Positions 43,742 to 62,457 of a DNA stretch of 64,000 bases are shown in pieces; position 1 is the first letter of the stretch, and each line of letters begins with the position of its first letter. Under the pieces are notes generated by a model. The model saw only the letters and a program-made list of their open reading frames with translations. It was not told the DNA's origin and ran no database searches. The translations under genes and the position numbers were made by a program. The DNA lies in the IMG/VR virus record IMGVR_UViG_3300008111_000002, positions 145,837-209,836 of that record, one strand, 5' to 3'.

Positions 43742-43816
43742 TCTATCGCTCCTTGGTGTCACTGCGTTGTTGCAGTGTTTATAGTATACCCTCAGCTGCC
43801 CAAAATGTCAACCAAT

Positions 43817-44050
43817 TTACTCCGGTTTGAACACTAGATATTTGTGCTGTTTCAACAGCTGGATTGCCGCTCGGACCTCCCTGGCTCTGAGTTCCTGATA
43901 CTCTAGGTTCTCACGTGCGGCCTTCAGAGTCTGCTCCTCGTCCTGATGATTAAAGAAGTGGTGTGTGCTGATGTACCACCTCTTACCCTCGTCTATGATC
44001 ATCTTTATGGTGCCAAGGTTCTTGTACTGCTGGATCTCATTGACTTTCAT
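43817..44050 (-). CDS. hypothetical protein
   Basis: 77-aa ORF. Confidence 0.55.
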   Translation of the reverse strand: MKVNEIQQYKNLGTIKMIIDEGKRWYISTHHFFNHQDEEQTLKAARENLEYQELRAREVRAAIQLLKQHKYLVFKPE

Positions 44051-44127
44051 AGTGGCTTCTTTCTAGAATAAAAAAGCCCGGGGAGTCCCCTCAACCCGGG
44101 CAAGGGGATCCAATCCCCGGAGCAACC

Positions 44128-44310
44128 TTAACGATATCCCTTTTGACGTATCATCAGCGTGGCCACCCACATCAAGGCCACACCCACTAGGCTGACTGCT
44201 AGACTGCACAGCAGATCGTAATCCGTAGTGCTCTGCTCAATGCCGCCTACCCCGCCTGCGGCTAGGATGATACCCATGAATACAAAAAATGCTATGACTC
44301 GATCTGACAT
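44128..44310 (-). CDS. small two-TM membrane protein
   Basis: SD AAGGAG, own promoter, two hydrophobic helices. Confidence 0.6.
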   Translation of the reverse strand: MSDRVIAFFVFMGIILAAGGVGGIEQSTTDYDLLCSLAVSLVGVALMWVATLMIRQKGYR

Positions 44311-44547
44311 GTTCTGCTCCTTTGTTTAACTGTTTACAGTATAGCTTCTCCGGCCCAACCTGTCAACCAAAATTTAATTTAATCTGATTGATCTCTCGGA
44401 CCCGGCCCCGAGGTTTCTTCTGCAGATAGAACGCGAATCCTACGCGAAAGATCTTAACGAAATGCAGTCCGCCTACTCGCTTGTATGAAATCATCTGATC
44501 GCTCCTTGATTGAAAGGGGACTTACGCTGTCGCTGCCCCGAAACTGT

Positions 44548-44844
44548 TTAATAAACTTCGTCTGCGTAACCGTAGTCTTCGTCTGTGCCGTAGCCTGCGC
44601 TGGCCATTGCTGAATCAAAATCTCCGTCCATGCTTTCGTCCGGAGCACCCCAGGCGCACTCACGTTCCTGTGCGTTGGTCAACTCCCAATCTTCCTGAAT
44701 CTTTGCCTTGGCCAACTCCACGTCCCCGCCGCACAGTTCCAGCACATCGTTATAATCTGCTGCGTCCCAGCACTCGGCAACCCAGTGGCCGCCTGCTTCG
44801 TAGTTGTCCATTGCGAACTGTTGCAGTTGTTGGATTTTGCTCAT
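44548..44844 (-). CDS. acidic hypothetical protein
   Basis: SD AAGGAG, promoter with leader hairpin. Confidence 0.65.
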   Translation of the reverse strand: MSKIQQLQQFAMDNYEAGGHWVAECWDAADYNDVLELCGGDVELAKAKIQEDWELTNAQERECAWGAPDESMDGDFDSAMASAGYGTDEDYGYADEVY

Positions 44845-44923
44845 TTTGGGCTCCTTTGTTTAGTTCACTGCGTTTGTGCAGTGTCTAAAGTATAGCGCAG
44901 GTTGTCCAATTTGTCAACCAAAA

Positions 44924-45211
44924 TCAGCAGCGATTTGTCTGGTAGGGTTTTCTTTGATTTTTAGGGAGGTGTCCCGCGCACATCTTTTCAGCGGCACGAT
45001 CCCAGTGCGGAACCTGAGCGATCAAACTTTCTCCAGGCTTTGGATCCCACGGGCGGTCACGAGGATCTCTACGATTCTCTGCCACGATGGTTTCTAAGGC
45101 TGCACAGCCTGTTAATGCACAGAGGATGAGTGCTGTACCGCACCACCTGCCTGCTGATGATCCCAAAGTAGCTTTCTGGTTACCAGCGTGTTGACCTTGT
45201 TCTCTAGCCAT
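44924..45211 (-). CDS. possible lipoprotein (start uncertain)
   Basis: ALILCALTGC lipobox-like segment. Confidence 0.35.
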   Translation of the reverse strand: MAREQGQHAGNQKATLGSSAGRWCGTALILCALTGCAALETIVAENRRDPRDRPWDPKPGESLIAQVPHWDRAAEKMCAGHLPKNQRKPYQTNRC

Positions 45212-45375
45212 TTCAGTTCCTCTTCTGTGAGTGTGTCAGTGTCCTGCTCGCCCTGCAGTACCTTAATTATAGCTTGGGTTTGATCCTGTGTCAAGCTGTG
45301 ATATTCACTTTCAACCCACTGAGTCAACTGCCGTCCCAGCTGCTGAGTTCTTCCTATCTTGCGCCAATCATTCAT
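45112..45375 (-). CDS. hypothetical protein
   Basis: 87 aa, coupled to upstream gene. Confidence 0.5.
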   Translation of the reverse strand: MNDWRKIGRTQQLGRQLTQWVESEYHSLTQDQTQAIIKVLQGEQDTDTLTEEELKWLENKVNTLVTRKLLWDHQQAGGAVQHSSSVH

Positions 45376-45745
45376 TTGAGGTTGCCTTGATTAATTCATT
45401 GCCCTCGACTATGACCAAACGCACATTGTTCATCTTGCTCTTGAGATCATCTATAAGGCTGTCACGATCACGGCCTTGGCCAAGGAATGAATCATCATCC
45501 TTGCGAAAGGCGTAGAGCTGACCTTGGTGCTGCTCTAGAGTTACTTCAATGACTGTGAGTTCATCTTCGGGGGTGGGTTCTGTCTCGAGTTCATACTTCT
45601 TCATCTGAGCCTTGAGCTGCTGCTCAGTGATGCCCATGTCTCGCATTATGGACAACATGGTGAAACGAGAAAATGCGGCATGTAGTCTCCATCCTATTGC
45701 TACGCCCAGGACCAAGACCAAAATCGTTAGAGTTGCATCATCCAT
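45368..45745 (-). CDS. N-terminally membrane-anchored hypothetical protein
   Basis: MDDATLTILVLVLGVAIGW; TAAATA upstream on the minus strand. Confidence 0.6.
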   Translation of the reverse strand: MDDATLTILVLVLGVAIGWRLHAAFSRFTMLSIMRDMGITEQQLKAQMKKYELETEPTPEDELTVIEVTLEQHQGQLYAFRKDDDSFLGQGRDRDSLIDDLKSKMNNVRLVIVEGNELIKATSNE

Positions 45746-45806
45746 AATATTATTTAATCTATTTGTGTGTATAGTGCGGGCAGCGGGGCCTTGGGCCCCA
45801 ACTGCC

Positions 45807-46151
45807 TCAATCCAGCCTAGAACCAGCGTAGGCTTGGAATCCGTATTTCTTAAACACCTGTGCTGCGGCCTCTGCGCCTGCTTCCAGTGTGTCCACATTC
45901 TGGCAACCAAACTTACTTGGGTTCCACATCTGCAGTCCCCCTGAGTAGGCTGGGCGGATATCGCATTCTTTCAAGGCCTTGCCCAACTTGGTATTTCCCT
46001 TGACGCCGTGGATGGTAACCCAGGCGAAGCCACAGGCAAACTGATCCTGACCGCCCAACCTCTCTTGGAAGAACTTGGCTGCTGCCTGATGGGCTGCGGT
46101 CTGTGCCTCTTGAACCACTGCAGGGATCTGCTCTGGAGTTACTGTGATCAT
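45807..46151 (-). CDS. conserved-looking phage hypothetical protein
   Basis: CGFAWV...Q.V...EAGAEAAA.V...GSRLD pattern. Confidence 0.65.
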   Translation of the reverse strand: MITVTPEQIPAVVQEAQTAAHQAAAKFFQERLGGQDQFACGFAWVTIHGVKGNTKLGKALKECDIRPAYSGGLQMWNPSKFGCQNVDTLEAGAEAAAQVFKKYGFQAYAGSRLD

Positions 46152-46273
46152 TGTGCGGTCTCCTTCATGATGGTCTGTGTCTTGCCCACGGCCTTGTCAA
46201 TTGCTGAGGCCACGCCCGAGATACCAACTGTGGCCACGAACATGCCTGCCACGAACGCTATCAAGATTTTCAT
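46148..46273 (-). CDS. 41-aa signal/TM peptide
   Basis: MKILIAFVAGMFVATVG...; ATGA overlap with next gene. Confidence 0.55.
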   Translation of the reverse strand: MKILIAFVAGMFVATVGISGVASAIDKAVGKTQTIMKETAQ

Positions 46274-46371
46274 CGCTCACTCCTTGTTGTCTAAGTGTTT
46301 ACAGTATACTACCTTGCCTGCCCTTTGTCAACCAAAATAAAGACCCTGCTGTGTGCAGGGCCTTTGCTTAG

Positions 46372-46626
46372 TTAATTTACAATTATAATGTTATTTGTTG
46401 CTAGTTGCTGTTTTGCTGATTGTAATGCTTTGTTAATTGCTTGTGCTTTTTGTTGTGCAGTGTCTGTAATATTGCAAATGTCCCCGGTAGCGTAAACTGC
46501 GCTGCGTTGTGTTATGTGACTGTTATTGCAGAAGCTTACTAAAATGCGTAGTGTTTTTAGCTTTTTGTTTTGTACAATTTTAGCAAAAGCTTTTTGTGCA
46601 AGTATTGCGTTAGCGTAAGTTTGCAT
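46372..46626 (-). CDS. hypothetical protein, compositionally biased (Q/A/K/N/I; no Glu, Pro or Trp)
   Basis: SD AAGGAG, own promoter and terminator. Confidence 0.6.
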   Translation of the reverse strand: MQTYANAILAQKAFAKIVQNKKLKTLRILVSFCNNSHITQRSAVYATGDICNITDTAQQKAQAINKALQSAKQQLATNNIIIVN

Positions 46627-46698
46627 TGTTGCGCTCCTTTTTGTTTAACAGTGTGTATATAATAGCACCAGCTGTCCAAAAAGTCAACCAAAATGTTC

Positions 46699-46725
46699 AA
46701 TAACCCGGCACTGCGCCGGGTTATT
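46699..46725. terminator. intrinsic terminator
   Basis: AATAACCCGGC-actgc-GCCGGGTTATT perfect 11-bp stem. Confidence 0.75.
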
Positions 46726-46733
46726 GCTAACAG

Positions 46734-47009
46734 TTACGCATACAAGTAATTGTCGGTGCAATAGTGTACAGTTTTATAAAACTTGCTTTGTGCGTCGGTG
46801 TACATGTGCATAATTGTGTCGCAAAGTTGGACTGCATTTTTATTTTGCATAAACTGTACAAGTGCTGCGTAAATTGTAACAATGTCGGTGTGTTGCTCGG
46901 CGCAGACAGTGTTGTCGGCGTTGACGTCGACAGTGCGTAAGTATTTTGCAATGTCGGCTTGCAAAAGTTGTACAATAATTGCTACGTCGGCGTTAGTAAC
47001 TTTTTGCAT
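46734..47009 (-). CDS. hypothetical protein, compositionally biased
   Basis: ATG after GGAG (MQKVTNADV...). Confidence 0.6.
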   Translation of the reverse strand: MQKVTNADVAIIVQLLQADIAKYLRTVDVNADNTVCAEQHTDIVTIYAALVQFMQNKNAVQLCDTIMHMYTDAQSKFYKTVHYCTDNYLYA

Positions 47010-47139
47010 TGTTAGCTCCGGTAGTTGCACTGCGTTTTGCAGTGTTTAAATTATAGTACCAAAACGCCGGACTGTCAACCAAAAAATTAGTTGTTAAAAA
47101 AGCAACCGGGTCAGTTGGGGGGCGTGTGCCCCCCTCCCC

Positions 47140-47619
47140 TTACTCTGCAGTTACCACGCTGCCTAGTTTGATGTTAAACACAATGCTGTCGTCCCCCGCC
47201 CTAAACTCGCTTGCCAGTGCCGCTGCCTGCGCCTCATCCCTAGTAATCTCTACACCGTTGCGTGTGTAGCGTGGCGCTTTGCGTTCCGCAGTCTTGTCCA
47301 TTGTGCATCGCACATAGTATTCGCCCTTGTGTGCGATAATGTAGGGGAATACAGCCCACTCGCCCCATGGCAAACCTGCATTCTCTGCTGGCAGTTCGCC
47401 AGTTGCTCGCTTCTCAATCACTTCCTCAATCTCGTCGTATACCTGTCCGATGATTGCGGTAAACTCTGAACGCTTAACAATAGCGTCCTGTCCCTTGCGT
47501 ACCTTCAACATACGCTCCGTGACAAACTTGACTGGCTGTTGCTTCTTGCTCAACACCAAGTCCAACAGTTGTTGTGTGTTGTTGTCTGTGCCCTGAACTA
47601 CTAGTTGTGCTATTTGCAT
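47140..47619 (-). CDS. hypothetical protein
   Basis: 159 aa, SD AAGGAG, promoter. Confidence 0.65.
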   Translation of the reverse strand: MQIAQLVVQGTDNNTQQLLDLVLSKKQQPVKFVTERMLKVRKGQDAIVKRSEFTAIIGQVYDEIEEVIEKRATGELPAENAGLPWGEWAVFPYIIAHKGEYYVRCTMDKTAERKAPRYTRNGVEITRDEAQAAALASEFRAGDDSIVFNIKLGSVVTAE

Positions 47620-47843
47620 TTGTTGCTCCTTAGTTGCCTGCGTATCGCAGTATCATTAGTATATGGCCAGCACACCAAAATGTCAACCAAAATATCAAAT
47701 GTCCCATCAGTCCGTAGGGTTATTCATCATGTTCGTTCATCGTCATCATGCAGACATTCTAACACCGTTCGTCCATTTGGTCAAGCCAAAAAAAAGCCCT
47801 GAGCACGTAGCCCAGGGCCTGCCAATCCCGGGAGCGAATCGGG

Positions 47844-48140
47844 TTAGGCAGCAACAGTTGCCGCAGCAGCAGTACTTGCTGTAGCTGTGGCAGGGTTCTT
47901 CTTCGCGGTGTAGGCGATCGCAGCTTCCACAGCAGCATTGCCAGCACCAAAGCCACGAGCCACGAGTTCTTGAACGATCTCACCTTTGGTCATTGGCTTG
48001 CCAAGATCAACCAGCTCAACACCAGTGTGTCCGTTCTTGGCCAGAATCTTGATACGCATCTGGTCATTGGCGAAACGCAGCTTGGTCTTGCCGTTAAGGG
48101 TTGAAACACCTGCTACACTAAAACGCTTGTCAGTCGACAT
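47844..48140 (-). CDS. hypothetical protein with Ala/Thr-rich tail
   Basis: 98 aa, SD GAGAGG, promoter and terminator. Confidence 0.65.
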   Translation of the reverse strand: MSTDKRFSVAGVSTLNGKTKLRFANDQMRIKILAKNGHTGVELVDLGKPMTKGEIVQELVARGFGAGNAAVEAAIAYTAKKNPATATASTAAAATVAA

Positions 48141-48385
48141 AATAATTACCTCTCTGTGTGTGAATAAAAACTACCAACCAATTTGATAGCATTTTGAGTA
48201 TACTACCAAACCATTTGTCCGTCAACCAATTATTTTTCCAAATTGTTTGGAATTGGCAACAATTGCAATAGTTCTTCCACCCTGCGATGATCTGCATCGC
48301 CCGCCCCACCGCATTCGATGGAGAAGGCAAAATTAAATGTTCTTGCCATGCTGTTTCCCTATATAGTCGTATATAGCAGCGGGGC

Positions 48386-49012
48386 CTACTGGTCCACTAA
48401 CTTCAAGGCCTCGCCGCCTTCTTTGGTCCAGCGATAGAGATCCTCATCCATACGCTCTTCCTCTTCGTATTCAGCCAGGCTCTCGCTGATGGCAAAGAAC
48501 TCATCTAGATCTTCGGGCAAGGTATCCTTGGCACCCTGACTGTCACCCCAATCTGAGTAGCAGTCATCACAGCCGTTGTCCCATACACCAGCAAAGCACA
48601 TACCTGGTTCGTAGTAGTATGCACGAACTGTGTAGCCCTGTTCAACCAACTCCTCATAGACTCCTGTGGGAGGTGCCCAGGCTGAATCAAAACTTGCAGT
48701 CATCAAGTTACCATCAGGATGAATATCCAAGGTGCCATCCTGGCCACCTACATCCCATTTAGTTCCCCAACGGCCAGACTGGAATGAATACCAATCACTG
48801 TGACCAAACTTCTCTATGTTGCTCTTAACTCGTGCTTCGTGTGCGGCCTGTTCGTCTCCTCCCACACTGCCTGCCACGGTTTCAGTCAACTCCTTGGGTG
48901 TAGGAATCACATGGTGACAGAACTCGCCACGCTCGTAGGCTTCAGCCAGCGCCTTGATCTTGGCAGGATCCTCATGACCAATTTCTATAAAGTTGTTGCA
49001 CCAATTAGGCAT
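48386..49012 (-). CDS. DUF1281/YubB-like protein
   Basis: MPNWCNN, WY......WGTKWD, FDSAWAPP, YYEPG..FAG. Confidence 0.75.
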   Translation of the reverse strand: MPNWCNNFIEIGHEDPAKIKALAEAYERGEFCHHVIPTPKELTETVAGSVGGDEQAAHEARVKSNIEKFGHSDWYSFQSGRWGTKWDVGGQDGTLDIHPDGNLMTASFDSAWAPPTGVYEELVEQGYTVRAYYYEPGMCFAGVWDNGCDDCYSDWGDSQGAKDTLPEDLDEFFAISESLAEYEEEERMDEDLYRWTKEGGEALKLVDQ

Positions 49013-49013
49013 A

Positions 49014-49241
49014 CTAGGCTCCTCGAATCATGTTTAACAAACGATCGTTCTGTGCGTCTTGATATTGACGTTGCATCACTGTGTCGAAGCGATCAATCAT
49101 ACGATCCTCAATCCTCTGTGCATTCATGTCAAAGATCTGACTCACGGTCTTGTAGATCTTGTGCTGTGCCCACGGAGTAGTCTCGGGGTCCTCTAGCACG
49201 GCCATTGCACGACGAATGTAATCAAACTCTTGAGGTGTCAT
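49014..49241 (-). CDS. hypothetical protein
   Basis: ATG after GGAGCGAAC. Confidence 0.6.
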   Translation of the reverse strand: MTPQEFDYIRRAMAVLEDPETTPWAQHKIYKTVSQIFDMNAQRIEDRMIDRFDTVMQRQYQDAQNDRLLNMIRGA

Positions 49242-49306
49242 AGTTCGCTCCTGTTTAGTTAGTGTGTATATAATAACACACACTAACCAAACTGTCAACC
49301 AAAATC

Positions 49307-49666
49307 TTATACAACCTTGACCTTGCTATAGCCTGCGGACAACAATGCCAGAGCATCTTGTGCAGTTGCTGCCATAGTCACTACACGCTTACGGTTAATA
49401 TGGCCAGTAGTTGGATAGTAACGACCACCGCCATTGCCGATGGCATTGAAGTTACCACTACCAGGATTGAATCGATTATTGTTTCCCAGAATCCAACGAT
49501 TGAGGCGACCGTCCTTGATTGATCGAAGGTGATCACTGTTTTCGAGAATGTTCATTCTCTTAGACATATCCTCGCTCCAGTAACCAAGAGCGTTGGCCAC
49601 GTCTTTAGTATAGCACAGGGGATGAGCAGCGACGTATTCGCAAATCATCTGATTTTGACTTTTCAT
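49307..49666 (-). CDS. hypothetical protein, possible N-terminal winged HTH
   Basis: ICEYVAAHP..YTKDVANALG...SKRMNILE. Confidence 0.5.
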   Translation of the reverse strand: MKSQNQMICEYVAAHPLCYTKDVANALGYWSEDMSKRMNILENSDHLRSIKDGRLNRWILGNNNRFNPGSGNFNAIGNGGGRYYPTTGHINRKRVVTMAATAQDALALLSAGYSKVKVV

Positions 49667-49732
49667 GGGTTCTCCATAAAGTGTTGTTTAGTTCAAACAG
49701 TATAACAGGGGGTTGCCCCCCTGTCAACCAAT

Positions 49733-50086
49733 TTATGCCTCTGCAAATGCCTCCAACGCTGCCTGTGCCGCACCGTCCAGCATTACGCCATCTTGTGCTT
49801 TAATCTTGTCTGCAGTTACCTTTATGCGGTATGCGTCCATCTCTGCAGTCTTTGCTTCCATAGCAGGCCACACTACGTCTTGCGGGTTAAGGTAAGCACC
49901 TGTGTAGTCTACCTTGTCCTCTTTCAGTGTAATCTCGCCTGCCTTAATGCCTTCAAACACCATGCCCCATGTAGGCTGTTGCGGACGGCCAGTAGGGCCA
50001 AACAGTTCCACTGCCTTTGCCTGCAGTTTCTCTGTTGCAATTTCATTCAAGCGACGGAGAAAGTAATTGCGTTGTTCCTGTTCCAT
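49733..50086 (-). CDS. hypothetical protein
   Basis: 117 aa, SD AGGAG, hairpin promoter. Confidence 0.65.
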   Translation of the reverse strand: MEQEQRNYFLRRLNEIATEKLQAKAVELFGPTGRPQQPTWGMVFEGIKAGEITLKEDKVDYTGAYLNPQDVVWPAMEAKTAEMDAYRIKVTADKIKAQDGVMLDGAAQAALEAFAEA

Positions 50087-50108
50087 AATACGCTCCTAAA
50101 AAGTCTGT

Positions 50109-50160
50109 CACTGCAAAATTGCAGTGTGTGTATATTAACACACACTGCCCAATCTGTCAA
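50109..50160 (-). promoter_or_regulatory. promoter with -10 inside a 10-bp inverted repeat, plus leader hairpin
   Basis: CACTGC-aaaatt-GCAGTGTGTG-tatattaa-CACACACTGC...TGTCAA. Confidence 0.85.
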
Positions 50161-50165
50161 CCGTT

Positions 50166-50477
50166 TTATGCCTCAAAATTTTCTACAATCATAATACGTC
50201 CAGCCAGCAAGTCTTCTACCAGTTGCACTGCTCGCCGCTCTGTGCCGCCAATGTGCCAGTCATAGTGCCCCATGGGAGTGCCATACTCTTTCCAGTCGTA
50301 AATCGTTGCTACTGTGCCGTCGCTAAACTCAATGCACCACTCCTGCGTGGTCTTGTCGCCACCGCCCATCCCCTCCCCCAGCAAGTCCTGCAGCTTTGCA
50401 AAGGTGGTTCCTACATAGCCCTGCAGATGTGTGCCGTTGAACTTTTCTGCAAAGTAATCGTAAACTCGTGCTTCCAT
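50166..50477 (-). CDS. conserved-looking phage hypothetical protein
   Basis: LQGY..T..KL..LLG....DKT..EW.IEF.DG.VATIYDWK.....WHIGG. Confidence 0.65.
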   Translation of the reverse strand: MEARVYDYFAEKFNGTHLQGYVGTTFAKLQDLLGEGMGGGDKTTQEWCIEFSDGTVATIYDWKEYGTPMGHYDWHIGGTERRAVQLVEDLLAGRIMIVENFEA

Positions 50478-50495
50478 GTTGCGCTCCTAGTATGT

Positions 50496-50547
50496 CACTG
50501 CGTTATTGCAGTGTGTGTATAGTAACACACACTGCCCAAAATGTCAA
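50496..50547 (-). promoter_or_regulatory. promoter with -10 inside a 10-bp inverted repeat, plus leader hairpin
   Basis: CACTGC-gttatt-GCAGTGTGTG-tatagtaa-CACACACTGC...TGTCAA. Confidence 0.85.
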
Positions 50548-50550
50548 GTG

Positions 50551-55712: not shown

Positions 55713-55826
55713 ATGGGCTCCTTTGTCTAAGTATGTATATTATATGGCCTAGTGCCTATTCTGTCAACCAAAAAAGGTGAGTGAGGGACCCTGAACAAGT
55801 CCCCCACTCTAGCCATGGTGGAGGTC

Positions 55827-56903
55827 TTAATTCTCCATGGCCTTCAAAACATACTTACCGTATTTCTTGTGGAACTCATCAAAGTTCTTCATCTTTGTTG
55901 CGTCCAACGGCAAGTTGTAGTTAGTAAGGGCAGTCTTAGCACCCATCACAACCAACTCTGTTGGGAAGTTATCCATCATGTAGCGGAAGAAGCAGTCCGC
56001 CTGACTGTCCCAATTAGTAGCCTTCTTGTCTGCTTGATCTTTGAGCTCGTAGCACAAGCTCACAGTCAAGGAATACATGGCTGACACTTCCTTAATCTGC
56101 AGGTCCTTAACCTTGCCGCTAAGGATGTCGGGAGCCTTAGGCAGTTTACCAGCAATCTTACGATGTGCCATAAACTTAACAGCCAAGCCGTCACCAATAG
56201 CACCTGCAACCAAGTCAGTGAGCGTGTCAGTGTCAGTGTCATCGTCCTGCAGGAGATCGCTGACGAACACCCATGAACGAGGAGTTGCAAAAGCCTTAGA
56301 GCTGGACTTGGGATCAAAGTCATACAAGTCCTGCTTGGCAAAGCCTACATAACCAACAACCTCAGGATGGATCTTGTTAGCAGTAGCCCACTCTTGGAAA
56401 TCGTCAAAGTCAACTTTGGCTTCCAAGTGCAGGAAGCGGTTGGCCAACGGAGCAGGCATACGATAGGTAACACCCTTGTCGCCATCGCGGTTACCAGCCG
56501 CTACAATGTCCACGCCCTTGGGCAGGATGTATTGTCCTACACGACGGTTCAGAACCAACTGGTAGGCGGCCGCTTGGACTGCGGGAGGAGCGGAGTTGAG
56601 CTCGTCCAAGAAGATGATTGCACGGCTGTCTGGGTCAGTGGGCAATTCTGCTGGGGGTGCCCAAACCATTGTGCCTTGTTCTGCGTTGTAATAAGGGATA
56701 CCTTTGATGTCTGTAGGTTCCCAGAGTGGTAGACGAATATCAATTACTTCTCTCCCCTCGGAGTCGCCAATCTGCTTGACGATGTCACTCTTACCAATAC
56801 CGGGCGGGCCCCACAGGAACACCGGACGGCGCTTTTGAATTGCTTTTTGAATTGCCTTCTTGGCCTTCTTAGGACCAACCTGGCGAATAGAATTATCAGA
56901 CAT
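55827..56903 (-). CDS. MoxR-like AAA+ ATPase
   Basis: GPPGIGKS, FLDELN, AAGNR, LANRF, TPRSW. Confidence 0.9.
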   Translation of the reverse strand: MSDNSIRQVGPKKAKKAIQKAIQKRRPVFLWGPPGIGKSDIVKQIGDSEGREVIDIRLPLWEPTDIKGIPYYNAEQGTMVWAPPAELPTDPDSRAIIFLDELNSAPPAVQAAAYQLVLNRRVGQYILPKGVDIVAAGNRDGDKGVTYRMPAPLANRFLHLEAKVDFDDFQEWATANKIHPEVVGYVGFAKQDLYDFDPKSSSKAFATPRSWVFVSDLLQDDDTDTDTLTDLVAGAIGDGLAVKFMAHRKIAGKLPKAPDILSGKVKDLQIKEVSAMYSLTVSLCYELKDQADKKATNWDSQADCFFRYMMDNFPTELVVMGAKTALTNYNLPLDATKMKNFDEFHKKYGKYVLKAMEN

Positions 56904-56972
56904 TTAAGACCTCCAAAAAAAGTGTTTTGCTACTTGCTACTGACTGTGTCGTTCAGTTCATATATTATGCGT

Positions 56973-57623
56973 TCAAACTGCTGTCTTGTCAACGACAATC
57001 TTCACATAATTCAACTGTGTTGTATTGTCGCCACGCACGTTCTTGATCTTGCCCTTGATGGTATACTCACCGCCCACAGGCAGCTCTTTGTTGAACCAGA
57101 AGTCCACGAAGCTGTTGTTCATACGAGCGGTGATATGATATTTGTTGTAGTGAATGCTATAGCGTTGTTTGATTACCTGAATGTCACCCTCCACACGCTG
57201 ACCATCAGTGCCTGTTAGCTGATCGCTTTCACGGATCTGATCCATGAGCTGCTTGTTGGCATGATCCTTGAGCATGACGTAGGGGAGGCAGCTGACCACG
57301 CTGAGCTGATAGCTGTCTTTGGCCGAATCAAACTCCTCACGCTGAGTCAGCTTGAGCGCAGTGGTCTGAAAGTCGTTGATCTTGCCACTGAGCTGCAACA
57401 GAAGGTAACCAGTGAAGTGACGGCGAACTTCGCGGCCTTCAATGATATCATTCTCAGTTACGGGATTGGGTTCTTTGCCCATCAACCAGAACTTGACCAA
57501 GACCTTGTTGCAGCGAGTCTCGATCTTCTGAGTCTCAGTGTTGTAGACGTCGCTCTTGAAGTAGCCGCCGTTGATACGGTGTGCTGCAACTGCTGTACCC
57601 CAAACAAGATCTGCTGTTAGCAT
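56973..57623 (-). CDS. hypothetical protein, possible C-terminal OB fold
   Basis: C-terminal beta pattern ...YTIKGKIK...TTQLNYVKI. Confidence 0.5.
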   Translation of the reverse strand: MLTADLVWGTAVAAHRINGGYFKSDVYNTETQKIETRCNKVLVKFWLMGKEPNPVTENDIIEGREVRRHFTGYLLLQLSGKINDFQTTALKLTQREEFDSAKDSYQLSVVSCLPYVMLKDHANKQLMDQIRESDQLTGTDGQRVEGDIQVIKQRYSIHYNKYHITARMNNSFVDFWFNKELPVGGEYTIKGKIKNVRGDNTTQLNYVKIVVDKTAV

Positions 57624-57757
57624 TATCGCTCCTTGTGTCTAAGTATGTATATTATATGACCTCTTTTGGATTTTGTCAACCAAAAGAAAAGCCGCACTAG
57701 GCGGCTCAAAGAAATTCCCCGGGAGCGAATCGGATCTTTTACTTTGTGTAGTTCCTC

Positions 57758-58003
57758 TTAGGCGAACACGTTAGCGCGGCTACCAGTGATGTCACGAGCA
57801 GAAACGCTGTACTGAGCGCGGCCGTCTTTGTTCTTGTGCTTGCGAACAACAAGACCTGCTTGACGGAACTCAGTCATACGAGCGCGGAGATTCTTGATAC
57901 CGTAGGTGCTGTCAGCTTGCAAAGAGCTGAGGCTGTTACCTGTACCGCGGAGATGTGACTCCAAGAATTCCTTTTGAGTAGTTTTGATAGTTGTAAATGG
58001 CAT
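57758..58003 (-). CDS. small winged-HTH-like DNA-binding protein
   Basis: LESHLRGTG.SLS..QA...YGIKNLRARMTEFRQAGLVV. Confidence 0.55.
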   Translation of the reverse strand: MPFTTIKTTQKEFLESHLRGTGNSLSSLQADSTYGIKNLRARMTEFRQAGLVVRKHKNKDGRAQYSVSARDITGSRANVFA

Positions 58004-58095
58004 TTTAAGTTTCCTTTGTTAAATGGCTAACATTCGTTAGCGTCCTGTTATTATGCACTCTTGACCATCCCTGATCAAGAGTGCATTTTGCCAAT

Positions 58096-58284
58096 TTACT
58101 TCTTAACAGTAATATCTGAACGAATAAACATACCAATTACCAAAACAGCCAACCACGTCCAGAAGGTGAACGGAATGGCCAGAGTGGGGAACAGTGTGTT
58201 CAATGCCCAAATAACTGCCCAGGGGAACAGTACTATCAGAACCAATAGGGCAATAATAAACCCTGCGACACCAAGCTTGATCAT
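58096..58284 (-). CDS. small membrane protein
   Basis: Two hydrophobic helices, SD AAGGAG. Confidence 0.6.
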   Translation of the reverse strand: MIKLGVAGFIIALLVLIVLFPWAVIWALNTLFPTLAIPFTFWTWLAVLVIGMFIRSDITVKK

Positions 58285-58286
58285 AA

Positions 58287-59369
58287 TTAACTCCTTTTCA
58301 TAACAGTGACTTCTGCCATGCTCTTCCAATTAGTAGGAAAGCTCTTGCGCAGATCTGCACATTTTAGCACAGTTCTAAGGCTGAGTTCACGCAGACGATT
58401 CTTGTTCACGTGAATAAATTCTAGGATCTCGTCCTTGACACAGTCTTCAAACTCATAACTATCTAGCATTCCGTCCTGCGTGATCTGCTTGATCCTGAGC
58501 ACTTTCTCACGCTCAGTATCCATTTGGAGATCAATATAGTGACAGCGTGACTCTAGTGCCGCCAAGTGATCCTGAAGCTTCTTAGAGCGAACATTCTCAA
58601 ACTTGATGTTAGTGATAAAGATAGCGCCTGCTTTGAACTCAAACTTGTCCGGCACTCCCTCTGTGCGCAGTACACGGCTGTCAGTGTTCCACGAAATGGT
58701 TCGCTTACTGCCACTGTCCAAAGCCGCTTTGAGGATGTTCAAGCTCAAGTCATCTAGTAGCACTGAGTCGCAGTCATCAAACACCACGACATTGCCCTTC
58801 TCACTGTACTTGTAGAGCTTGCTATATAGACCCACTGCTGACATTGCGCCCTTGACAATCTCGTACTTGGGCTTGCGTTGTCCCATCATGTCAAACAGAT
58901 CGTCCTTGCTCAGTACTTCTTCAACACCAAACGATTTGCCTACACCCGGAGGGCCTGTAACAATCATTGCGCGAACTGTGCCTTCTTTCACGGCTTTGGT
59001 CATCTCTTTCAGTACATCAAAGCGACCCCGTAGGCGTTCAATGATCTGTTCATCAGTCTCGTGTGCAATCACTGCATCTGGAACTGAGTTCTGCACCAAG
59101 CTCATAACACCCTCTGGCTCTGTGCTCTTGACGGGTTCTGTAATAGCAGGCAGTTCACCCTCTACTACAGTATACGAACGTGGACCCTGGCAACGGATGC
59201 GGATATTACGCTCTGGGAATCCCTCACAGCTAGCACCGTTGACAGTAACATAGCCTGTGCCGTCACTGCCCACGCGAAACTGCTCTACCAATTCAAATCG
59301 CCGACCCGCAACTGAAGTGTCCTGTCCGCGGATTTTGTAAGTACCTTCTAGTATTTCAATAACAGCCAT
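58287..59369 (-). CDS. AAA+ ATPase with N-terminal extension
   Basis: TGPPGVGKS, VVFDDCD, LKAALD, FITN, ALESRC. Confidence 0.8.
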   Translation of the reverse strand: MAVIEILEGTYKIRGQDTSVAGRRFELVEQFRVGSDGTGYVTVNGASCEGFPERNIRIRCQGPRSYTVVEGELPAITEPVKSTEPEGVMSLVQNSVPDAVIAHETDEQIIERLRGRFDVLKEMTKAVKEGTVRAMIVTGPPGVGKSFGVEEVLSKDDLFDMMGQRKPKYEIVKGAMSAVGLYSKLYKYSEKGNVVVFDDCDSVLLDDLSLNILKAALDSGSKRTISWNTDSRVLRTEGVPDKFEFKAGAIFITNIKFENVRSKKLQDHLAALESRCHYIDLQMDTEREKVLRIKQITQDGMLDSYEFEDCVKDEILEFIHVNKNRLRELSLRTVLKCADLRKSFPTNWKSMAEVTVMKRS

Positions 59370-59435
59370 GCTCGCTCTCCTGTGTGTGTAAAGTCATTAT
59401 TATAGGGCCACTAGGGCCCTATGTCAACCAAAACC

Positions 59436-59903
59436 TTACCAGCTGCTACAGTATTCAAAATCCCAAGCTTCTGGCAGTTCCAAACAGTCGTTGACAATTT
59501 GGACTGTGGTCTCTAGATCATCGTAGTAGTATTGATCGTAGTCAGTGCTGCCAAAGAAGAATCCGCTGGCTGAGGGCAACAGAGTTGCTGCACGATCTCT
59601 GTTGGCCAGTACTTCTTCACAGAGCTGCTTGAGCTTGATCAACTGCTCCCTGCTGACGTAGTGAGGCTTACATTCGTCCTCGCCCCCCTGCACGTTGTCA
59701 ACGAACCATTGATGAATAGCATTGGCCTTGCGCCAGTAGCCGGCCTCAATGCGTACTTCTTTGACGCAGCTGTCTGCACCCGATCGATCCCGGCCCTTGA
59801 GTTCTGGGAACTGCTCTTGAATAGCTTCTGCACGTTCCTTGTCTGCTTCATCCATGTAACCGCTGATGTAGCGTTTACCGCTGAGATACATGTCTAAACC
59901 CAT
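59436..59903 (-). CDS. conserved-looking phage hypothetical protein
   Basis: MGLDMYL, GYWRKANAIH.WF, GFFFGSTDYD..YY. Confidence 0.7.
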   Translation of the reverse strand: MGLDMYLSGKRYISGYMDEADKERAEAIQEQFPELKGRDRSGADSCVKEVRIEAGYWRKANAIHQWFVDNVQGGEDECKPHYVSREQLIKLKQLCEEVLANRDRAATLLPSASGFFFGSTDYDQYYYDDLETTVQIVNDCLELPEAWDFEYCSSW

Positions 59904-59946
59904 GATTCGCTCCTAAGTAGTTTAAAGGAAGTACTAGTATACGATC

Positions 59947-60438
59947 TCAGCTGCCCGTTGTCAATCGGAGAACGCCTGGGCGGCCCTTGACCGGTTCAAA
60001 ACCTTCAATAAACATGTGATGAAGGTCGCCTGAATTTGTGATCAGATTGTTGGCCAACATGTACATGGTTCCCCAGGTACGACCCTGCAGTTCAGCTTCC
60101 ACAGGCTCAGGGCCCCAATGACCGTCATAGATCACAGTGTGATAGTCTTGATAGGGATGCTCTTGGTAGAGATCATCAACTTCGTAGATGCTCCAAACTG
60201 AGCCCAAATCAAATTCAACAGCAAACGAACGATAGTTCTCGTACTTGCGATCAAATGCTTCAGTGTCCTGATCATAGGCATGCTTTAGCCCCTGTTCAAA
60301 ACCCCTGATCACAGCCTGCAGCTGATCAGCGAGATTATTGTTGATCACTCCCGTGAGCTTTTGCTGCACTGTGCGCAGCTGGCAGAGAGTGTTGTGTACC
60401 GTGGTAAAGTCTTCGCCCTTGAGTGTAACAGTTTGCAT
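59947..60438 (-). CDS. hypothetical protein
   Basis: 163 aa. Confidence 0.6.
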   Translation of the reverse strand: MQTVTLKGEDFTTVHNTLCQLRTVQQKLTGVINNNLADQLQAVIRGFEQGLKHAYDQDTEAFDRKYENYRSFAVEFDLGSVWSIYEVDDLYQEHPYQDYHTVIYDGHWGPEPVEAELQGRTWGTMYMLANNLITNSGDLHHMFIEGFEPVKGRPGVLRLTTGS

Positions 60439-60439
60439 A

Positions 60440-60814
60440 TTAGACCTCTACAGTGTGTGAATGACGCAGCGACAGCATGAACAGACGTTGGCTTAACTGT
60501 GCTGCTGCCTGTTTGGCCTGCTGTAGCGCAGTACCGATTATATCCTCAGCTGTGCCATCTGTCAATACCTCGCGGGCATCACCATAGCAACAGCCACCTA
60601 GATACTCTGAGGCCAGCTCGTGATCATCTATCAGTACACGAACACGCAGCATGAACCAGTCATAGTAGCCCGTGTCAATCTGCTCACAGAGCTGACTGAT
60701 ATCAGTAACTGAGTCATCGAAACAGTCCCGAGGATGCATGTCTTCCCAGGTCTTGTCCACTATGATGTCAAAGCCATCCCGCTCCATGCGGGCCAATTGA
60801 TCAAAATGTCGCAT
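60440..60814 (-). CDS. hypothetical protein
   Basis: MRHFDQL..., EYLGGC.Y. Confidence 0.6.
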   Translation of the reverse strand: MRHFDQLARMERDGFDIIVDKTWEDMHPRDCFDDSVTDISQLCEQIDTGYYDWFMLRVRVLIDDHELASEYLGGCCYGDAREVLTDGTAEDIIGTALQQAKQAAAQLSQRLFMLSLRHSHTVEV

Positions 60815-61058
60815 ACAGTTCCACCTTTGGATCAAGCTTGAACAATTCGCCCTCAGCACCCTTTAACAGTGTGTAGCGGCGCTGTACTTCAGATCTGCTG
60901 AGTTCACCATCGCAGGTAAGATTCTCGGGACTCAGTGCTGCTGCAATGTGATCAGCAACACGTTGACGATCTTCAAAGGTCTCTAAGGTTAACAATTGCT
61001 GCTGGAAGATCTCGCGGAAGCGATTCTCCTGAGCCAAGTACTTGTTGAGGTATTTCAC
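60801..61058 (-). CDS. hypothetical protein
   Basis: GTG start after GGAGCGAAC; LSPENLTCDGELS. Confidence 0.6.
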   Translation of the reverse strand: MKYLNKYLAQENRFREIFQQQLLTLETFEDRQRVADHIAAALSPENLTCDGELSRSEVQRRYTLLKGAEGELFKLDPKVELYATF

Positions 61059-61134
61059 AGTTCGCTCCTGTAAACACTGCACATCGCAGTCTTAACAGTA
61101 TACGATCACAGATCCAAACTGTCAACCACAAAAA

Positions 61135-61156
61135 AACCCTACTGTACAGTAGGGTT
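61135..61156. terminator. perfect 22-bp palindrome/terminator
   Basis: AACCCTACTGTACAGTAGGGTT with poly-A on the left. Confidence 0.7.
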
Positions 61157-61167
61157 ATTCAAGCCCA

Positions 61168-61479
61168 TCAGCCGCGATCTATTTCAAGGTCGGGTTCATC
61201 GTCTAGGATCTTGTAGTCTGAAACGCGATCCCAGCGGAAACTGCGCCACTCGCCTTTGTCTAGATCCCACACGGGCTGCACATCAGGATTGGGTTCTTTG
61301 ATGCCTCGAGGATGCTGCGATCCTGGCACGTAGTCCAAATTTGTAGTGCCGCGCAGCACACGTTGCGACCCATCTGCTTTGGTAAACGTTACAGCAACTT
61401 CTCCAGCAGCCAATGCACGTCTAACCTGATCTTTAAATTCAGCTGCTTCTGCTAGCTGCATGTCTTCTACTACTCGCAT
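61168..61479 (-). CDS. WYL_2-like (Sm/SH3-fold) protein
   Basis: VTFTKADGSQR.LRGT, VWDLDKGEWRSFRWDRV. Confidence 0.75.
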   Translation of the reverse strand: MRVVEDMQLAEAAEFKDQVRRALAAGEVAVTFTKADGSQRVLRGTTNLDYVPGSQHPRGIKEPNPDVQPVWDLDKGEWRSFRWDRVSDYKILDDEPDLEIDRG

Positions 61480-61508
61480 AGTTATTCTCCAATTATATAT
61501 TTAACTGT

Positions 61509-61595
61509 TGGTGCCCGGAGCCGGAATCGAACCGGCACGCTGTCGCCAGCGAGAGATTTTAAGTCTCTTGTGTCTACCTATTTCACCATCCGGGC
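61509..61595 (-). tRNA. tRNA-Leu (anticodon UAA)
   Basis: GCCCGGATGGTGAAATAGGTAGACAC...AGAGA-CT-TAA-AA-TCTCT, long variable arm, GGTTCGATTCC, 3' CCA. Confidence 0.95.
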
Positions 61596-61598
61596 ATT

Positions 61599-61675
61599 TG
61601 GTGGGCCCCCCGGGACTTGAACCCGGACTCAACGGATTATGAGTCCGCTGCTTTAACCAATTAAGCTAAAGGCCC
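61599..61675 (-). tRNA. tRNA with CAU anticodon, probably Ile2 (lysidine type)
   Basis: GGGCCTTTAGC...GCGGA-CT-CAT-AA-TCCGT...GGTTCAAGTCC...CCA; no initiator C1:A72 or GGG:CCC stem; C4 and overall resemblance to Ile2. Confidence 0.85.
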
Positions 61676-61687
61676 TCAACAGCAGCA

Positions 61688-61716
61688 ACTATACAGTGTT
61701 AAAGGTCTTTTGTCAA
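61688..61716 (-). promoter_or_regulatory. sigma70 promoter for the tRNA pair
   Basis: TTGACA-17 bp-TATAGT. Confidence 0.75.
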
Positions 61717-61971
61717 TGGATTATTTGAGTCGTTCGCTCGGTCTTTGCTCACGACAAATTCTACGAATGTATCTAGACGATGCGCAACGATGTCAGGTGC
61801 AGCACGACATAAACAATCCAGATCAAAATCAGTGGGATAGTGACGCAGCAGTGCAGCAGCTTGTGTACGTATGATCTTGGGCACACCAGGTGTATTAATG
61901 CCCGCAGCTAGATCACTGAGAAATCGTCGCGATTCACGTATAGCACGATAGCGTTCGTCAGGTAATGTCAT
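61699..61971 (-). CDS. BPSL0761-like protein
   Basis: MTLPDERYRA......FL..L....TP.VPK.IR..A..LLRHYP. Confidence 0.65.
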   Translation of the reverse strand: MTLPDERYRAIRESRRFLSDLAAGINTPGVPKIIRTQAAALLRHYPTDFDLDCLCRAAPDIVAHRLDTFVEFVVSKDRANDSNNPLTKDL

Positions 61972-61977
61972 ATATGT

Positions 61978-62157
61978 TTATGTTGATAGGTATGTAGCAG
62001 CGGGGCCTTTGCGTGGCTTGATGTCATTGTCTCGTTCCCAGTGTATTTCTTCACGTAGTTGACCGTAGAAGTCACTGAGAGCCTGCAGGTATCCCACGTT
62101 ATAGCTCAGTATATTAGTAGCTATGAACACTAGTGTAATTAGAATTTTAGTTAACAC
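61978..62157 (-). CDS. 59-aa N-terminally hydrophobic protein
   Basis: GTG start, MLTKILITLVFIATNILSY...; TTGACA-18-TATAAT at 62186-62215. Confidence 0.45.
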   Translation of the reverse strand: MLTKILITLVFIATNILSYNVGYLQALSDFYGQLREEIHWERDNDIKPRKGPAATYLST

Positions 62158-62457
62158 GGTGGGATCCTAAGGTAGAGATACTGTTATTATATACGCATAT
62201 TTATGTGTGTGTCAATATTATGAATAGATATCTACATATATGTGTAGTATATACACAACACAGCAGCGGGGCCAGTTGACAGTGTGCGTATACTGTGTTA
62301 AACCCCCCTGAGTTGTGACTCTACGTTAAGAAATAGTCCAGGGAACCGTGGGAAAAAATAGGTCTTATGGTCCGTTATAGTGGGGTCCCTACTGTGAATT
62401 TTAGGCTATTTACAGCGTGTATAATGGTGGAGTGAGGGGTATACAAAAAATGGTCCC

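What the first reader, a model, noticed from the sequence alone, without database searches (positions are those of the whole stretch)
43760..62215. Early region built as terminator-promoter-RBS-ORF cassettes with a near-identical promoter repeated more than 25 times
Seen: nearly every 1-3 genes has TTGGTTGACA-17-TAnnnT, often directly after an intrinsic terminator, at a few-hundred-bp spacing between 43.8 and 53.9 kb. Established: PeSL (promoter early stem-loop) cassettes in T4-type phages mediate modular shuffling and minicircle formation by recombination. Inference: a shufflable library of host-takeover or anti-defence genes.
Basis: partly seen in the sequence, partly recalled or inferred. 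Interest (0 to 1): 0.62.

Follow-up and report, generated by a model that had tools for sequence, protein, structure and literature searches.

The report
Shuffling promoter cassettes in jumbo phage
A 19-kb stretch of a freshwater jumbo phage carries about 30 copies of a near-consensus bacterial promoter, each in front of one to three small unknown genes; related phages have swapped, lost or reordered these gene cassettes at the promoter copies, as described earlier for T4-type phages.

Summary
Between window 43.2 and 62.2 kb, all on the minus strand, there are 27 exact TTGACA-N17/18-TAnnnT sites and 30-31 if one -35 mismatch is allowed. Chance predicts about 4 in the whole window. The other 190 kb of the 210-kb record holds almost none.

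The record is a PA5oct-related jumbo myovirus found in many lake metagenomes. The repeat is longer than a promoter: TTTTGG-TTGACA-N17-TATAcT, often a hairpin starting at the predicted transcript start, then AGGAGCG and ATG. The downstream genes are unrelated ORFans.

A terminator sits directly upstream of only about a quarter of the promoters. Several others carry a hairpin inside the promoter.

In relatives the backbone is collinear, but this block is scrambled and only about 59% shared. In two pairs of 95-98% identical contigs, cassette replacements, an insertion and an order swap have edges at the -35 box, the -10 box, the Shine-Dalgarno sequence or the ATG.

The PeSL-like shuffling reading is therefore supported for the lineage. 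Minicircles and any host-takeover or anti-defence role remain untested.

The block is also a codon-usage island: GC3 is 0.53 against 0.23 elsewhere. The record's only two tRNA genes lie at its head.

Verdict: a new member of a known kind, of moderate interest.

The parts
43198..62215 (-). Promoter-dense, GC3-rich block of about 48 small genes, all transcribed leftwards; a hyperplastic early-type region
62186..62215 (-). First promoter of the block: TTGACA-N18-TATAAT
61688..61716 (-). Promoter in front of the two tRNA genes
61509..61675 (-). tRNA-Met(CAU) and tRNA-Leu(UAA), the only tRNA genes in the 210-kb record
61097..61156 (-). Terminator hairpin (61135-61156) followed by promoter P61125, with an ACTGC..GCAG hairpin at the predicted transcript start
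59399..59964 (-). Promoters P59964 and P59427 (P59427 has a hairpin in its spacer) flanking a 155-aa ORFan
57651..57707 (-). Terminator (57689-57707) followed by promoter P57679; shares 23 nt exactly with P55767
54513..57623 (-). Conserved core inside the block: 216-aa protein, MoxR-type AAA ATPase (55827-56903), terminator plus P55767, and a DUF2201 metallopeptidase/VWA protein (54513-55712)
58287..59369 (-). Conserved 360-aa AAA protein (phrog_1250)
53624..53935 (-). Promoters P53935 and P53652, which share a GACAGAGTC-GTG-ACTCTGTC hairpin in the spacer
49224..52163 (-). Densest run: P52159, terminator plus P51743, P51462, P51237, P50835, P50547, P50160, P49727 and P49298, each in front of one 52-119 aa ORFan. 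Five have the -10 hexamer as the loop of an 11-17 bp stem
47756..48225 (-). P48225 (TTGACG), the conserved 98-aa gene 47844-48140, then terminator plus P47784 (TTGACC)
46303..47686 (-). P47686; terminator plus P47078; hairpin plus P46687; terminator plus P46331
43783..44917 (-). P44917, P44366 and P43811, the last strong promoters of the block
43409..43439 (-). Strong terminator-like hairpin near the end of the block
48386..49012 (-). 208-aa DUF1281/Api92-like protein, a virus-wide family of unknown function

Best explanation
The block is the host-RNA-polymerase-read (presumably early) hyperplastic region of a PA5oct-related freshwater jumbo myovirus.

Each cassette has the same layout. A T-rich tract plus GG comes first and often doubles as the U-tract of an upstream terminator. 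Then come a consensus sigma-70 promoter (TTGACA-N17-TATAcT), a 25-40 nt leader that often starts with a hairpin, a strong AGGAGCG ribosome-binding site, and one to three small ORFans.

Because the same 30-90 nt regulatory module stands in front of unrelated genes in one orientation, it offers short homologies of up to 35 nt exact. The phage's own recombination system includes a RecA/UvsX-like protein at 14939-16018. I infer that recombination between these modules deletes, replaces, inserts and reorders cassettes, and homogenises the modules within a genome.

Shown: the repeats; the lack of paralogy among the cargo genes; the scrambled and half-unshared gene content in relatives; the cassette exchanges bounded by the module in close pairs; and the genome-specific form of the module.

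Inferred: promoter activity and early timing; recombination at the repeats as the cause rather than a correlate; any circular intermediates; the function of the cargo.
For: Enrichment and strand bias of the promoter pattern.

Extended repeat families: 12 copies of 61 nt and 6 copies of 90 nt.

No blastp hit among 47 block proteins, so the repeats are not tandem gene duplications.

About 93% of backbone genes have collinear homologues in G001/G003. In the block about 59% do, and in scrambled order. Individual cassettes sit at different places in different relatives.

L044 and L053 (95.8% identical, from different samples) differ by four cassette replacements whose two edges lie at -35, at -10, in the spacer or at the ATG, plus one small ORF inserted between two SD copies. 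L090 and L091 (about 97% identical) show an A-B versus B-A order swap that begins exactly at a promoter.

Of 46 internal homology ends, 20 fall inside promoter windows that cover 11% of the sequence (p = 2e-8). For L044/L053 it is 10 of 12, p about 0.02 even against an intergenic-only null.

Concerted evolution: ACTGC-N4-8-GCAG follows 12 of 31 window promoters, starting 6 nt after the -10 box in 11 of the 12. It follows 1 of 666 promoters in relatives, including those in front of orthologous genes.

Contigs from three lake samples leave the window's sequence at promoter edges: 50843, 52163, 49287 and 51695/51707.

The relative PA5oct lacks its own RNA polymerase, is blocked by rifampicin, and has 32 TTGAC/TATAATA promoters (PMC7318152).
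Against: Promoter windows make up about half of all intergenic sequence. Every cassette carries the shared motif, so an alignment will run into it wherever the true crossover was. The coincidence of breakpoints with promoters is therefore only modestly stronger than 'breakpoints are intergenic'.

One indel in L044/L053 lies at an ATGA stop/start overlap with no promoter.

The only near-identical contig of the window's own strain (L139, 99.7-99.9%) is collinear over 15 kb.

Exact identities between copies are short, mostly under 20 nt.

No transcription data with defined 5' ends exist for this phage, and no raw reads were available to look for circles.
Confidence: 0.7

Rival explanations
1. The repeats are only regulatory signals kept alike by selection for maximal early expression (convergence on the sigma-70 consensus and a strong SD). 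Cassette turnover happens by illegitimate recombination anywhere between genes. The promoters mark the junctions only because intergenic space is mostly promoter.
For: Promoter windows are 45-57% of intergenic sequence. Most exact identities between copies are under 20 nt. One indel lies at an ATGA gene junction without a promoter. The window's own strain is structurally stable at 99.7% identity.
Against: Similarity extends into parts with no known constraint for sigma-70: spacer sequence, leader hairpin, and the CG after AGGAG. It comes in genome-specific forms (12/31 versus 1/666), which points to copying or homogenisation within a genome rather than convergence. In L044/L053, 10 of 12 ends lie inside the module, p about 0.02 against the intergenic null. 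Homology ends flush at -35, -10, SD or ATG.
Confidence: 0.2
2. The promoter-leader module is itself a small mobile element (MITE-like, or spread by a homing or transposase activity) that inserts in front of genes. On this view it is not a passive recombination substrate.
For: The same gene has a promoter directly upstream in the window but none in relatives: gene 49241-49014 versus its homologues. The module has a genome-specific form at fixed register.
Against: No terminal inverted repeats or target-site duplications are visible around the modules. No transposase or integrase was found among the block proteins scanned. Module edges are graded rather than sharp.
Confidence: 0.05
3. The block is foreign: a chimeric assembly, or a recently acquired island from a higher-GC phage, so the contrast with the rest of the record is an artefact or a single transfer event.
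For: GC is 0.46-0.50 against 0.30-0.39 elsewhere, and the block lies at the end of the contig.
Against: The DUF2201 protein inside the block and the terminase outside it both have PA5oct as best cultured match. In the 138-kb relative G001 the same GC-rich, promoter-dense block lies inside the contig, flanked on both sides by lower-GC DNA. G003 has it too, 48 kb from an 80%-identical terminase. The vertically inherited MoxR and DUF2201 genes share the block's GC3. The junction is present in an independent metagenome contig and in many runs.
Confidence: 0.03

Closest known systems
PeSL (promoter-early stem-loop) cassettes of T4-like phages RB49/phi1, PST/T4 and nt-1/KVP40 (Arbiol et al. 2010, PMC2839356; Comeau et al. 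2014, PMC4122927)
   Same: Near-perfect sigma-70 promoters (TTGACA-N17-TATAAT, as in RB49/phi1) repeated in one orientation in a hyperplastic region full of ORFans. Upstream A/T-rich tract. Stem-loops that can act as terminators. Insertions, deletions and replacements between close relatives bounded by the motifs, with crossovers spread from the stem-loop to the SD. A lineage-specific form of the motif.
   Different: The host phage is a PA5oct-related jumbo myovirus, not a T4-like phage. Only about a quarter of the promoters have an upstream stem-loop. Others carry the hairpin inside the promoter (in the spacer, or with the -10 box as loop) or at the transcript start. Minicircles are not shown here. 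The region is also a sharp codon-usage island, which I did not find reported for PeSL regions in the two PeSL papers read here.
Host-takeover module of Bacillus phage SPO1 (Stewart et al. 1998; from memory, not checked here)
   Same: A compact cluster of about two dozen small early genes in many short operons, each with a very strong host-sigma promoter and a very strong ribosome-binding site.
   Different: SPO1's module lies in the terminal redundancy and has not, to my knowledge, been described as shuffling at its promoters. Its cargo has known host shut-off roles, whereas this block's cargo is unknown.
Pseudomonas phage PA5oct (Arenbergviridae), the closest cultured relative (Lood et al. 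2020, PMC7318152)
   Same: Jumbo myovirus. Terminase 54% and DUF2201 protein 46% identical. PA5oct depends on host RNA polymerase, has 32 TTGAC/TATAATA promoters, and carries tRNA-Met(CAT) and tRNA-Leu(TAA).
   Different: In PA5oct, and in the more distant 'group B' metagenome relatives, the MoxR-DUF2201 pair sits among replication-type genes in long operons, with no dense promoter array or GC rise around it. The promoter-dense GC3-rich block is a trait of the window's subclade.

Membership tests
PeSL regulatory cassettes (Arbiol 2010; Comeau 2014) | Repeated strong sigma-70-like early promoter with an A/T-rich tract upstream of the -35 box | tested here: met
   27-31 sites with consensus tattTtGG-TTGACA-N17-TATAaT. 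This is sequence only; activity was not measured.
PeSL regulatory cassettes (Arbiol 2010; Comeau 2014) | A stem-loop able to terminate upstream transcription as part of the same motif | tested here: inconclusive
   An upstream terminator-like hairpin is present at 7-8 of 31 window promoters, and at 11% of 664 promoters in relatives against 3% of random sites. Another 9 window promoters have a hairpin inside the promoter. The rest have none.
PeSL regulatory cassettes (Arbiol 2010; Comeau 2014) | Concentrated in hyperplastic regions rich in non-conserved ORFans | tested here: met
   About 59% of block genes have a homologue in G001/G003, in scrambled order, against about 93% collinear for the backbone. 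Most cargo has no Pfam or PHROG function.
PeSL regulatory cassettes (Arbiol 2010; Comeau 2014) | Insertions, deletions and replacements between closely related genomes have their edges in the motifs | tested here: met
   Met in relatives of the window: L044/L053 and L090/L091. Not seen in the window's own strain, where the only near-identical contig is collinear.
PeSL regulatory cassettes (Arbiol 2010; Comeau 2014) | Excised minicircles joined within the motif | not testable with these tools
   All runs were served as assembled contigs. The chimeric-promoter joints have 4-15 times the phage's depth and short sides, as expected from repeat collapse.
PeSL regulatory cassettes (Arbiol 2010; Comeau 2014) | Carried by a T4-like (Tevenvirinae-type) myovirus | tested here: not met
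   Best cultured relatives are PA5oct, Phosso, Atu_ph07 and Rak2-like jumbo phages. This is a feature of where PeSLs were described, not of how they work.

The most novel reading that the evidence does not exclude
The block is more than a PeSL-type region. It may be a separately maintained expression compartment of the genome.

It is written in a host-like codon dialect: GC3 is 0.53 against 0.23, TTA makes up 6% of Leu codons against 49%, and AGA 7% of Arg codons against 53%. It is driven by consensus host promoters. At its head it carries tRNA-Leu(UAA), whose cognate codon TTA the later AT-rich genes use heavily, beside a tRNA with anticodon CAU. That would let it be expressed before the phage has remodelled translation.

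Its composition holds (GC3 0.57-0.62) across relatives whose backbones differ in GC. Genes that moved into it (MoxR, DUF2201) have taken on its composition.

Its promoters have evolved built-in hairpins. In five, the -10 hexamer is the loop of an 11-17 bp stem kept by compensatory changes. These may act as overlapping terminator/promoter units or as structure-sensitive promoters.
Probability: 0.3. Interest if true: 0.7.

Novelty: new member of a known kind. Interest (0 to 1): 0.5.

Why it matters
It extends promoter-mediated modular shuffling, described so far for T4-like phages, to a different and environmentally abundant jumbo-phage lineage. More than 590 IMG/VR contigs carry a relative of the block's ATPase, and the window's own sequence is in 18 lake or freshwater runs from at least 13 studies.

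That gives many natural close pairs in which cassette gain, loss and reordering can be mapped to the base. It also marks a set of about 40 ORFans per genome as the fast-turnover, presumably early-expressed accessory genes. This is where counter-defence or host-takeover functions would be sought, although nothing here shows such functions.

The codon-usage island and the promoter-embedded hairpins are testable leads on how an AT-rich phage starts expression in its host.

Tried and rejected
Searches that found little:
- Megablast of the block and of the structural region against 50,697 phage records: no match.
- Exact-pattern scan of IMG/VR with TTGGTTGACANNTTGGNCAG: 31 loci with one exact match each. 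Several proved to be relatives, but the protein-based search was far more useful.
- Pfam and PHROGs on about 30 cargo proteins: only WYL_2, a winged HTH, a weak MarR-like match, DUF1281-like and unnamed PHROGs.
- PDB sequence search for two cargo proteins: nothing.
- Rfam: only the two tRNAs.

Ideas rejected:
- Tandem duplication: no paralogy among the block proteins.
- Chimeric assembly or a single foreign island.

Reads. Only contigs were served. The 'joints' that link two promoters (for example 51722 to 52146, and 51724 back to 49287) have depths of 26-188 against about 12 for the phage. I take these as collapsed repeat k-mers, not as evidence of deletions or circles.

Metagenome scan for a close relative of the window: one contig, collinear, so no breakpoints could be mapped in the window itself.

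Group B relatives were searched for another repeated promoter motif, and none was found.

Full report
**Observation.** The pattern TTGACA-N16-18-TAnnnT occurs 34 times in the window, against 4.06 +/- 2.17 in dinucleotide-preserving shuffles. Of these, 27 lie on the minus strand between 43783 and 62215. Allowing one mismatch in the -35 box adds four more. The longer word TTGGTTGACA occurs 16 times exactly, and 22 times with at most one mismatch, in the block, always on the minus strand. The window is the last 64 kb of a 209,836-bp IMG/VR virus record that CheckV rates about 60% complete. In the whole record 26 of 37 consensus sites fall in the last 20 kb on one strand. The copies are identical only in a 10-16 nt core and 60-85% alike over 61-90 nt. 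An upstream terminator is present at about a quarter of them. Three sites lie inside ORFs. The phage is not T4-type.

**What genome this is.** The window encodes a tail sheath, a T4-type large terminase, a RecA/UvsX-like protein, a DnaB-like helicase and a carbamoyltransferase. The terminase is closest to Pseudomonas phage PA5oct (54% aa), then Sinorhizobium phage Phosso, Agrobacterium phage Atu_ph07 and the Rak2-like jumbo phages. A DUF2201 metallopeptidase/VWA protein inside the promoter block has the same ranking of relatives, so the block belongs to the phage. PA5oct has no RNA polymerase of its own, is blocked by rifampicin and has 32 TTGAC/TATAATA promoters (PMC7318152). The window's exact sequence is held by 18 lake or freshwater runs from at least 13 studies.

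**Anatomy of the repeat.** The consensus over 30 copies is tattTtGG-TTGACA-nnTTGGnCA...-TATAcT-ata-ACACTG..., then AGGAGCG 5-8 nt before the ATG. Where a terminator precedes the promoter, its T-run is the same T-tract that precedes GG-TTGACA. Three kinds of hairpin occur:
- At P51462, P50835, P50547, P50160 and P49298 the -10 hexamer is the six-base loop of an 11-17 bp stem made from the spacer and the first transcribed bases. In an alignment of these five with one copy from a relative, 4 of 11 pairs show compensatory changes and none is broken.
- At P49727, P53935, P53652 and P59427 the hairpin lies within the spacer. P49727 has G6-CAA-C5, the polyG/polyC type described for RB49 PeSLs (PMC2839356).
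- At 12 of 31 promoters ACTGC-N4-8-GCAG follows, starting 6 nt after the -10 box in 11 of them, which is at the predicted transcript start.
I infer that the third kind gives the mRNAs a 5'-terminal stem-loop. Such stem-loops are known to stabilise E. coli mRNAs; this is established knowledge and was not tested here.

**Cargo.** About 48 minus-strand genes, mostly 40-160 aa, lie in the block. No two of 47 are detectably related, so the repeats did not arise by duplicating gene plus promoter. Recognisable proteins are few:
- a MoxR-type AAA ATPase and its DUF2201 partner
- a second AAA protein (phrog_1250)
- a WYL_2 protein
- a winged-helix protein
- a weak MarR-like match
- a DUF1281/Api92-like protein
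The rest have no family. Nothing ties them to host takeover or anti-defence.

**Relatives.** A search of IMG/VR with the MoxR-type protein found 596 related loci, of which 80 were kept. They fall into two groups. Group A (79-88% aa) has GC 0.44-0.53 around the gene and about 1.1 consensus promoters per kb, all on the gene's strand: 666 promoters in 584 kb. Group B (73-76% aa) has GC 0.35-0.40, only 1-4 such sites per 21 kb, and no other repeated motif. In group B and in PA5oct the MoxR-DUF2201 pair lies in another genomic neighbourhood, in long operons. The dense array is therefore a derived trait of the window's subclade. In the 138-kb relative G001 the block (about 26 kb, GC 0.50-0.52) is internal and flanked by DNA of GC 0.40-0.43. 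This rules out an end-of-contig or chimeric artefact.

**Shuffling.** Against group A contigs the window keeps a backbone: the tRNAs, the 59-kb AAA gene, the 57.1-54.5 kb operon, the 48.1-kb gene and 43.3 kb. Individual cassettes, however, sit elsewhere. The gene at 50086-49733 lies upstream of the AAA gene in L097, L068 and L041 but far downstream in L065. The gene at 46273-46148 follows the DUF2201 operon directly in L044, L053, L062 and L097. Outside the block about 93% of genes have collinear homologues in G001/G003. Inside it about 59% do, with at least seven changes of position.

Two close pairs allow base-level mapping. L044 and L053 (95.8% identical, different samples) differ in the block by four replacements: 207 vs 409 bp, 586 vs 445 bp, 1517 vs 253 bp, and 191 vs 98 bp. 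Their left edges are at the -35 box, the end of the -10 box (twice) or the ATG. Their right edges are at the TTTTGG-TTGACA of the next promoter or within its spacer/-10. A fifth difference is a small ORF inserted between two copies of AGGAGCGA. A sixth is an insertion at an ATGA stop/start overlap with no promoter. L090 and L091 (88-99% identical over the shared segments) carry two cassettes in opposite order, and one segment begins exactly at a promoter.

Over all close pairs, 20 of 46 internal homology ends have both coordinates within -15 to +75 of a -35 start, and that window covers 11% of the sequence (p = 2e-8). The stricter null matters. Promoter windows are about half of all intergenic sequence, and against that null the 10 of 12 ends in L044/L053 give p of about 0.02. 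This is the pattern reported for PeSLs, where crossovers were mapped from the stem-loop to between the -10 box and the SD (PMC2839356).

**Concerted evolution.** The ACTGC..GCAG leader follows 12 of 31 promoters in the window but 1 of 666 in relatives (Fisher p = 7e-17). Orthologues of the same cargo genes in relatives are preceded by promoters with other leaders that recur within those genomes. The -10-in-loop hairpin is likewise nearly confined to the window, with 1-2 cases in 666. Modules within a genome resemble each other more than they resemble the modules in front of orthologous genes elsewhere. That is what copying or conversion among the repeats would produce, and what convergence on a promoter consensus would not.

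**Population data.** Only assembled contigs were available. Contigs break at the promoters. In three lake samples, contigs at least 90% like the window leave it at 50843 and 52163 (the upstream edge of a -35 element, continuing into a terminator-like hairpin), at 49287 (a spacer), at 51695/51707 (a leader) and at 49013 (a gene start). The same cassettes therefore have other neighbours in related genomes in these samples. The short 'joints' between two promoters have much higher depth than the phage, and I do not count them. An RNA library holds five short contigs of the region, which does not show transcription. One metagenome contig (L139) is 99.7-99.9% identical to 58817-43947 and collinear apart from a 75-nt in-frame insert. 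At that distance the structure is stable.

**Composition.** The block has GC 0.46-0.50 against 0.30-0.39 elsewhere. The difference is almost all synonymous: GC1/GC2/GC3 are 0.54/0.39/0.525 in the block and 0.46/0.38/0.23 in the rest. TTA is 6% against 49% of Leu codons, AGA 7% against 53% of Arg codons, and AAA 32% against 82% of Lys codons. The record's only tRNA genes, Leu(UAA) and Met(CAU), lie at the head of the block behind one of its promoters. Block GC3 is 0.57-0.62 in G001 and G003 although their backbones are GC-richer than the window's. The vertically inherited MoxR and DUF2201 genes share it, whereas their group B orthologues have 0.44-0.45. My reading is an inference: the block is tuned to the host's translation apparatus and supplies tRNA-Leu(UAA), whose cognate codon TTA the AT-rich later genes use heavily. 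GC-biased conversion in a recombination-prone region is an alternative. I could not separate the two without knowing the host.

**Mechanism and rivals.** Best explanation (confidence 0.7): a host-polymerase-read hyperplastic region whose repeated promoter-leader-SD modules both drive expression and serve as short homologies for cassette exchange and for homogenising the modules. Main rival (0.2): the modules are only signals, and the junctions coincide with them because intergenic space is mostly promoter. Minor rivals: a mobile promoter element (0.05), and a foreign island or chimera (0.03, largely refuted).

**Comparison and novelty.** This works like the PeSL regions of T4-like phages, and it meets the tests for promoter, hyperplastic setting and motif-bounded exchanges. 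The stem-loop criterion is met only in part, minicircles are untested, and the carrier is a different phage family. A full-text search found no paper that applies PeSLs to jumbo phages beyond a reference-list entry. I file it as a new member of a known kind. It has two unusual side features worth follow-up: the codon-usage island and the promoter-embedded hairpins.

Noticed in passing
window 43200-62200 versus the rest of the 210-kb record: A sharp codon-usage island. GC3 is 0.525 against 0.23. TTA is 6% against 49% of Leu codons, AGA 7% against 53% of Arg codons, AAA 32% against 82% of Lys codons. GC2 is unchanged. The same block GC3 (0.57-0.62) is found in relatives whose backbones differ in GC.
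   Followed up: partly
window 61509-61675 (-): The only two tRNA genes of the record, Leu(UAA) and Met(CAU), lie at the head of the block behind promoter P61716. The Leu(UAA) tRNA matches TTA, a codon that the rest of the genome uses heavily and the block avoids.
   Followed up: partly
window 49239-51462 (-): P51462, P50835, P50547, P50160, P49298: The -10 hexamer is the loop of an 11-17 bp stem. Four of 11 pairs show compensatory changes and none is broken. Only P51462 is followed by a T-rich tail. This form is almost absent from 666 promoters of relatives.
   Followed up: partly
window 48265/48266: The window lacks 75 nt (25 codons, in frame) of a small gene. These 75 nt are present in the near-identical metagenome contig L139 and in contigs of all four runs laid. 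This is either a deletion variant or an assembly slip in the record.
   Followed up: yes
window 51843: Contigs of all three DNA runs carry 25 extra bases behind 51843, at the 3' end of gene 52090-51839. The end of that protein may therefore differ from what the window gives.
   Followed up: no
window 47844-48140 (-): This 98-aa protein with no family match is kept in nearly all group A relatives. Its DNA has 10-fold higher summed contig depth than its neighbours in lake samples, so many co-occurring phages share it.
   Followed up: no
window 54513-56903 (-); G004; PA5oct 234-239 kb: The MoxR-type ATPase and DUF2201 (metallopeptidase/VWA) pair lies in the promoter block in the window's subclade, but among replication-type genes in group B relatives and in PA5oct. 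In PA5oct records the DUF2201 protein is annotated variously as HNH endonuclease, homing endonuclease or Zn-dependent hydrolase.
   Followed up: partly
window 48386-49012 (-) and 61168-61479 (-): A DUF1281/Api92-like protein and a WYL_2 protein are separate genes here. The ESM Atlas has a viral cluster in which the two domains are fused.
   Followed up: no
window 35355-36824 (+): A carbamoyltransferase (Carbam_trans_N/C, E 1e-43 to 1e-51) lies next to the DnaB-like helicase. It may belong to a nucleotide or DNA modification pathway.
   Followed up: no
G001 (relative, 138 kb) 128-136 kb: A second, smaller cluster of five consensus promoters on the plus strand, with slightly raised GC (0.45-0.46).
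   Followed up: no
L044, L053 and other group A loci: Many promoters in these relatives are preceded by a GACCCTA-loop-TAGGGTC hairpin plus a T-run. This lineage-specific stem-loop form also occurs once in the window, at 61135-61156.
   Followed up: no
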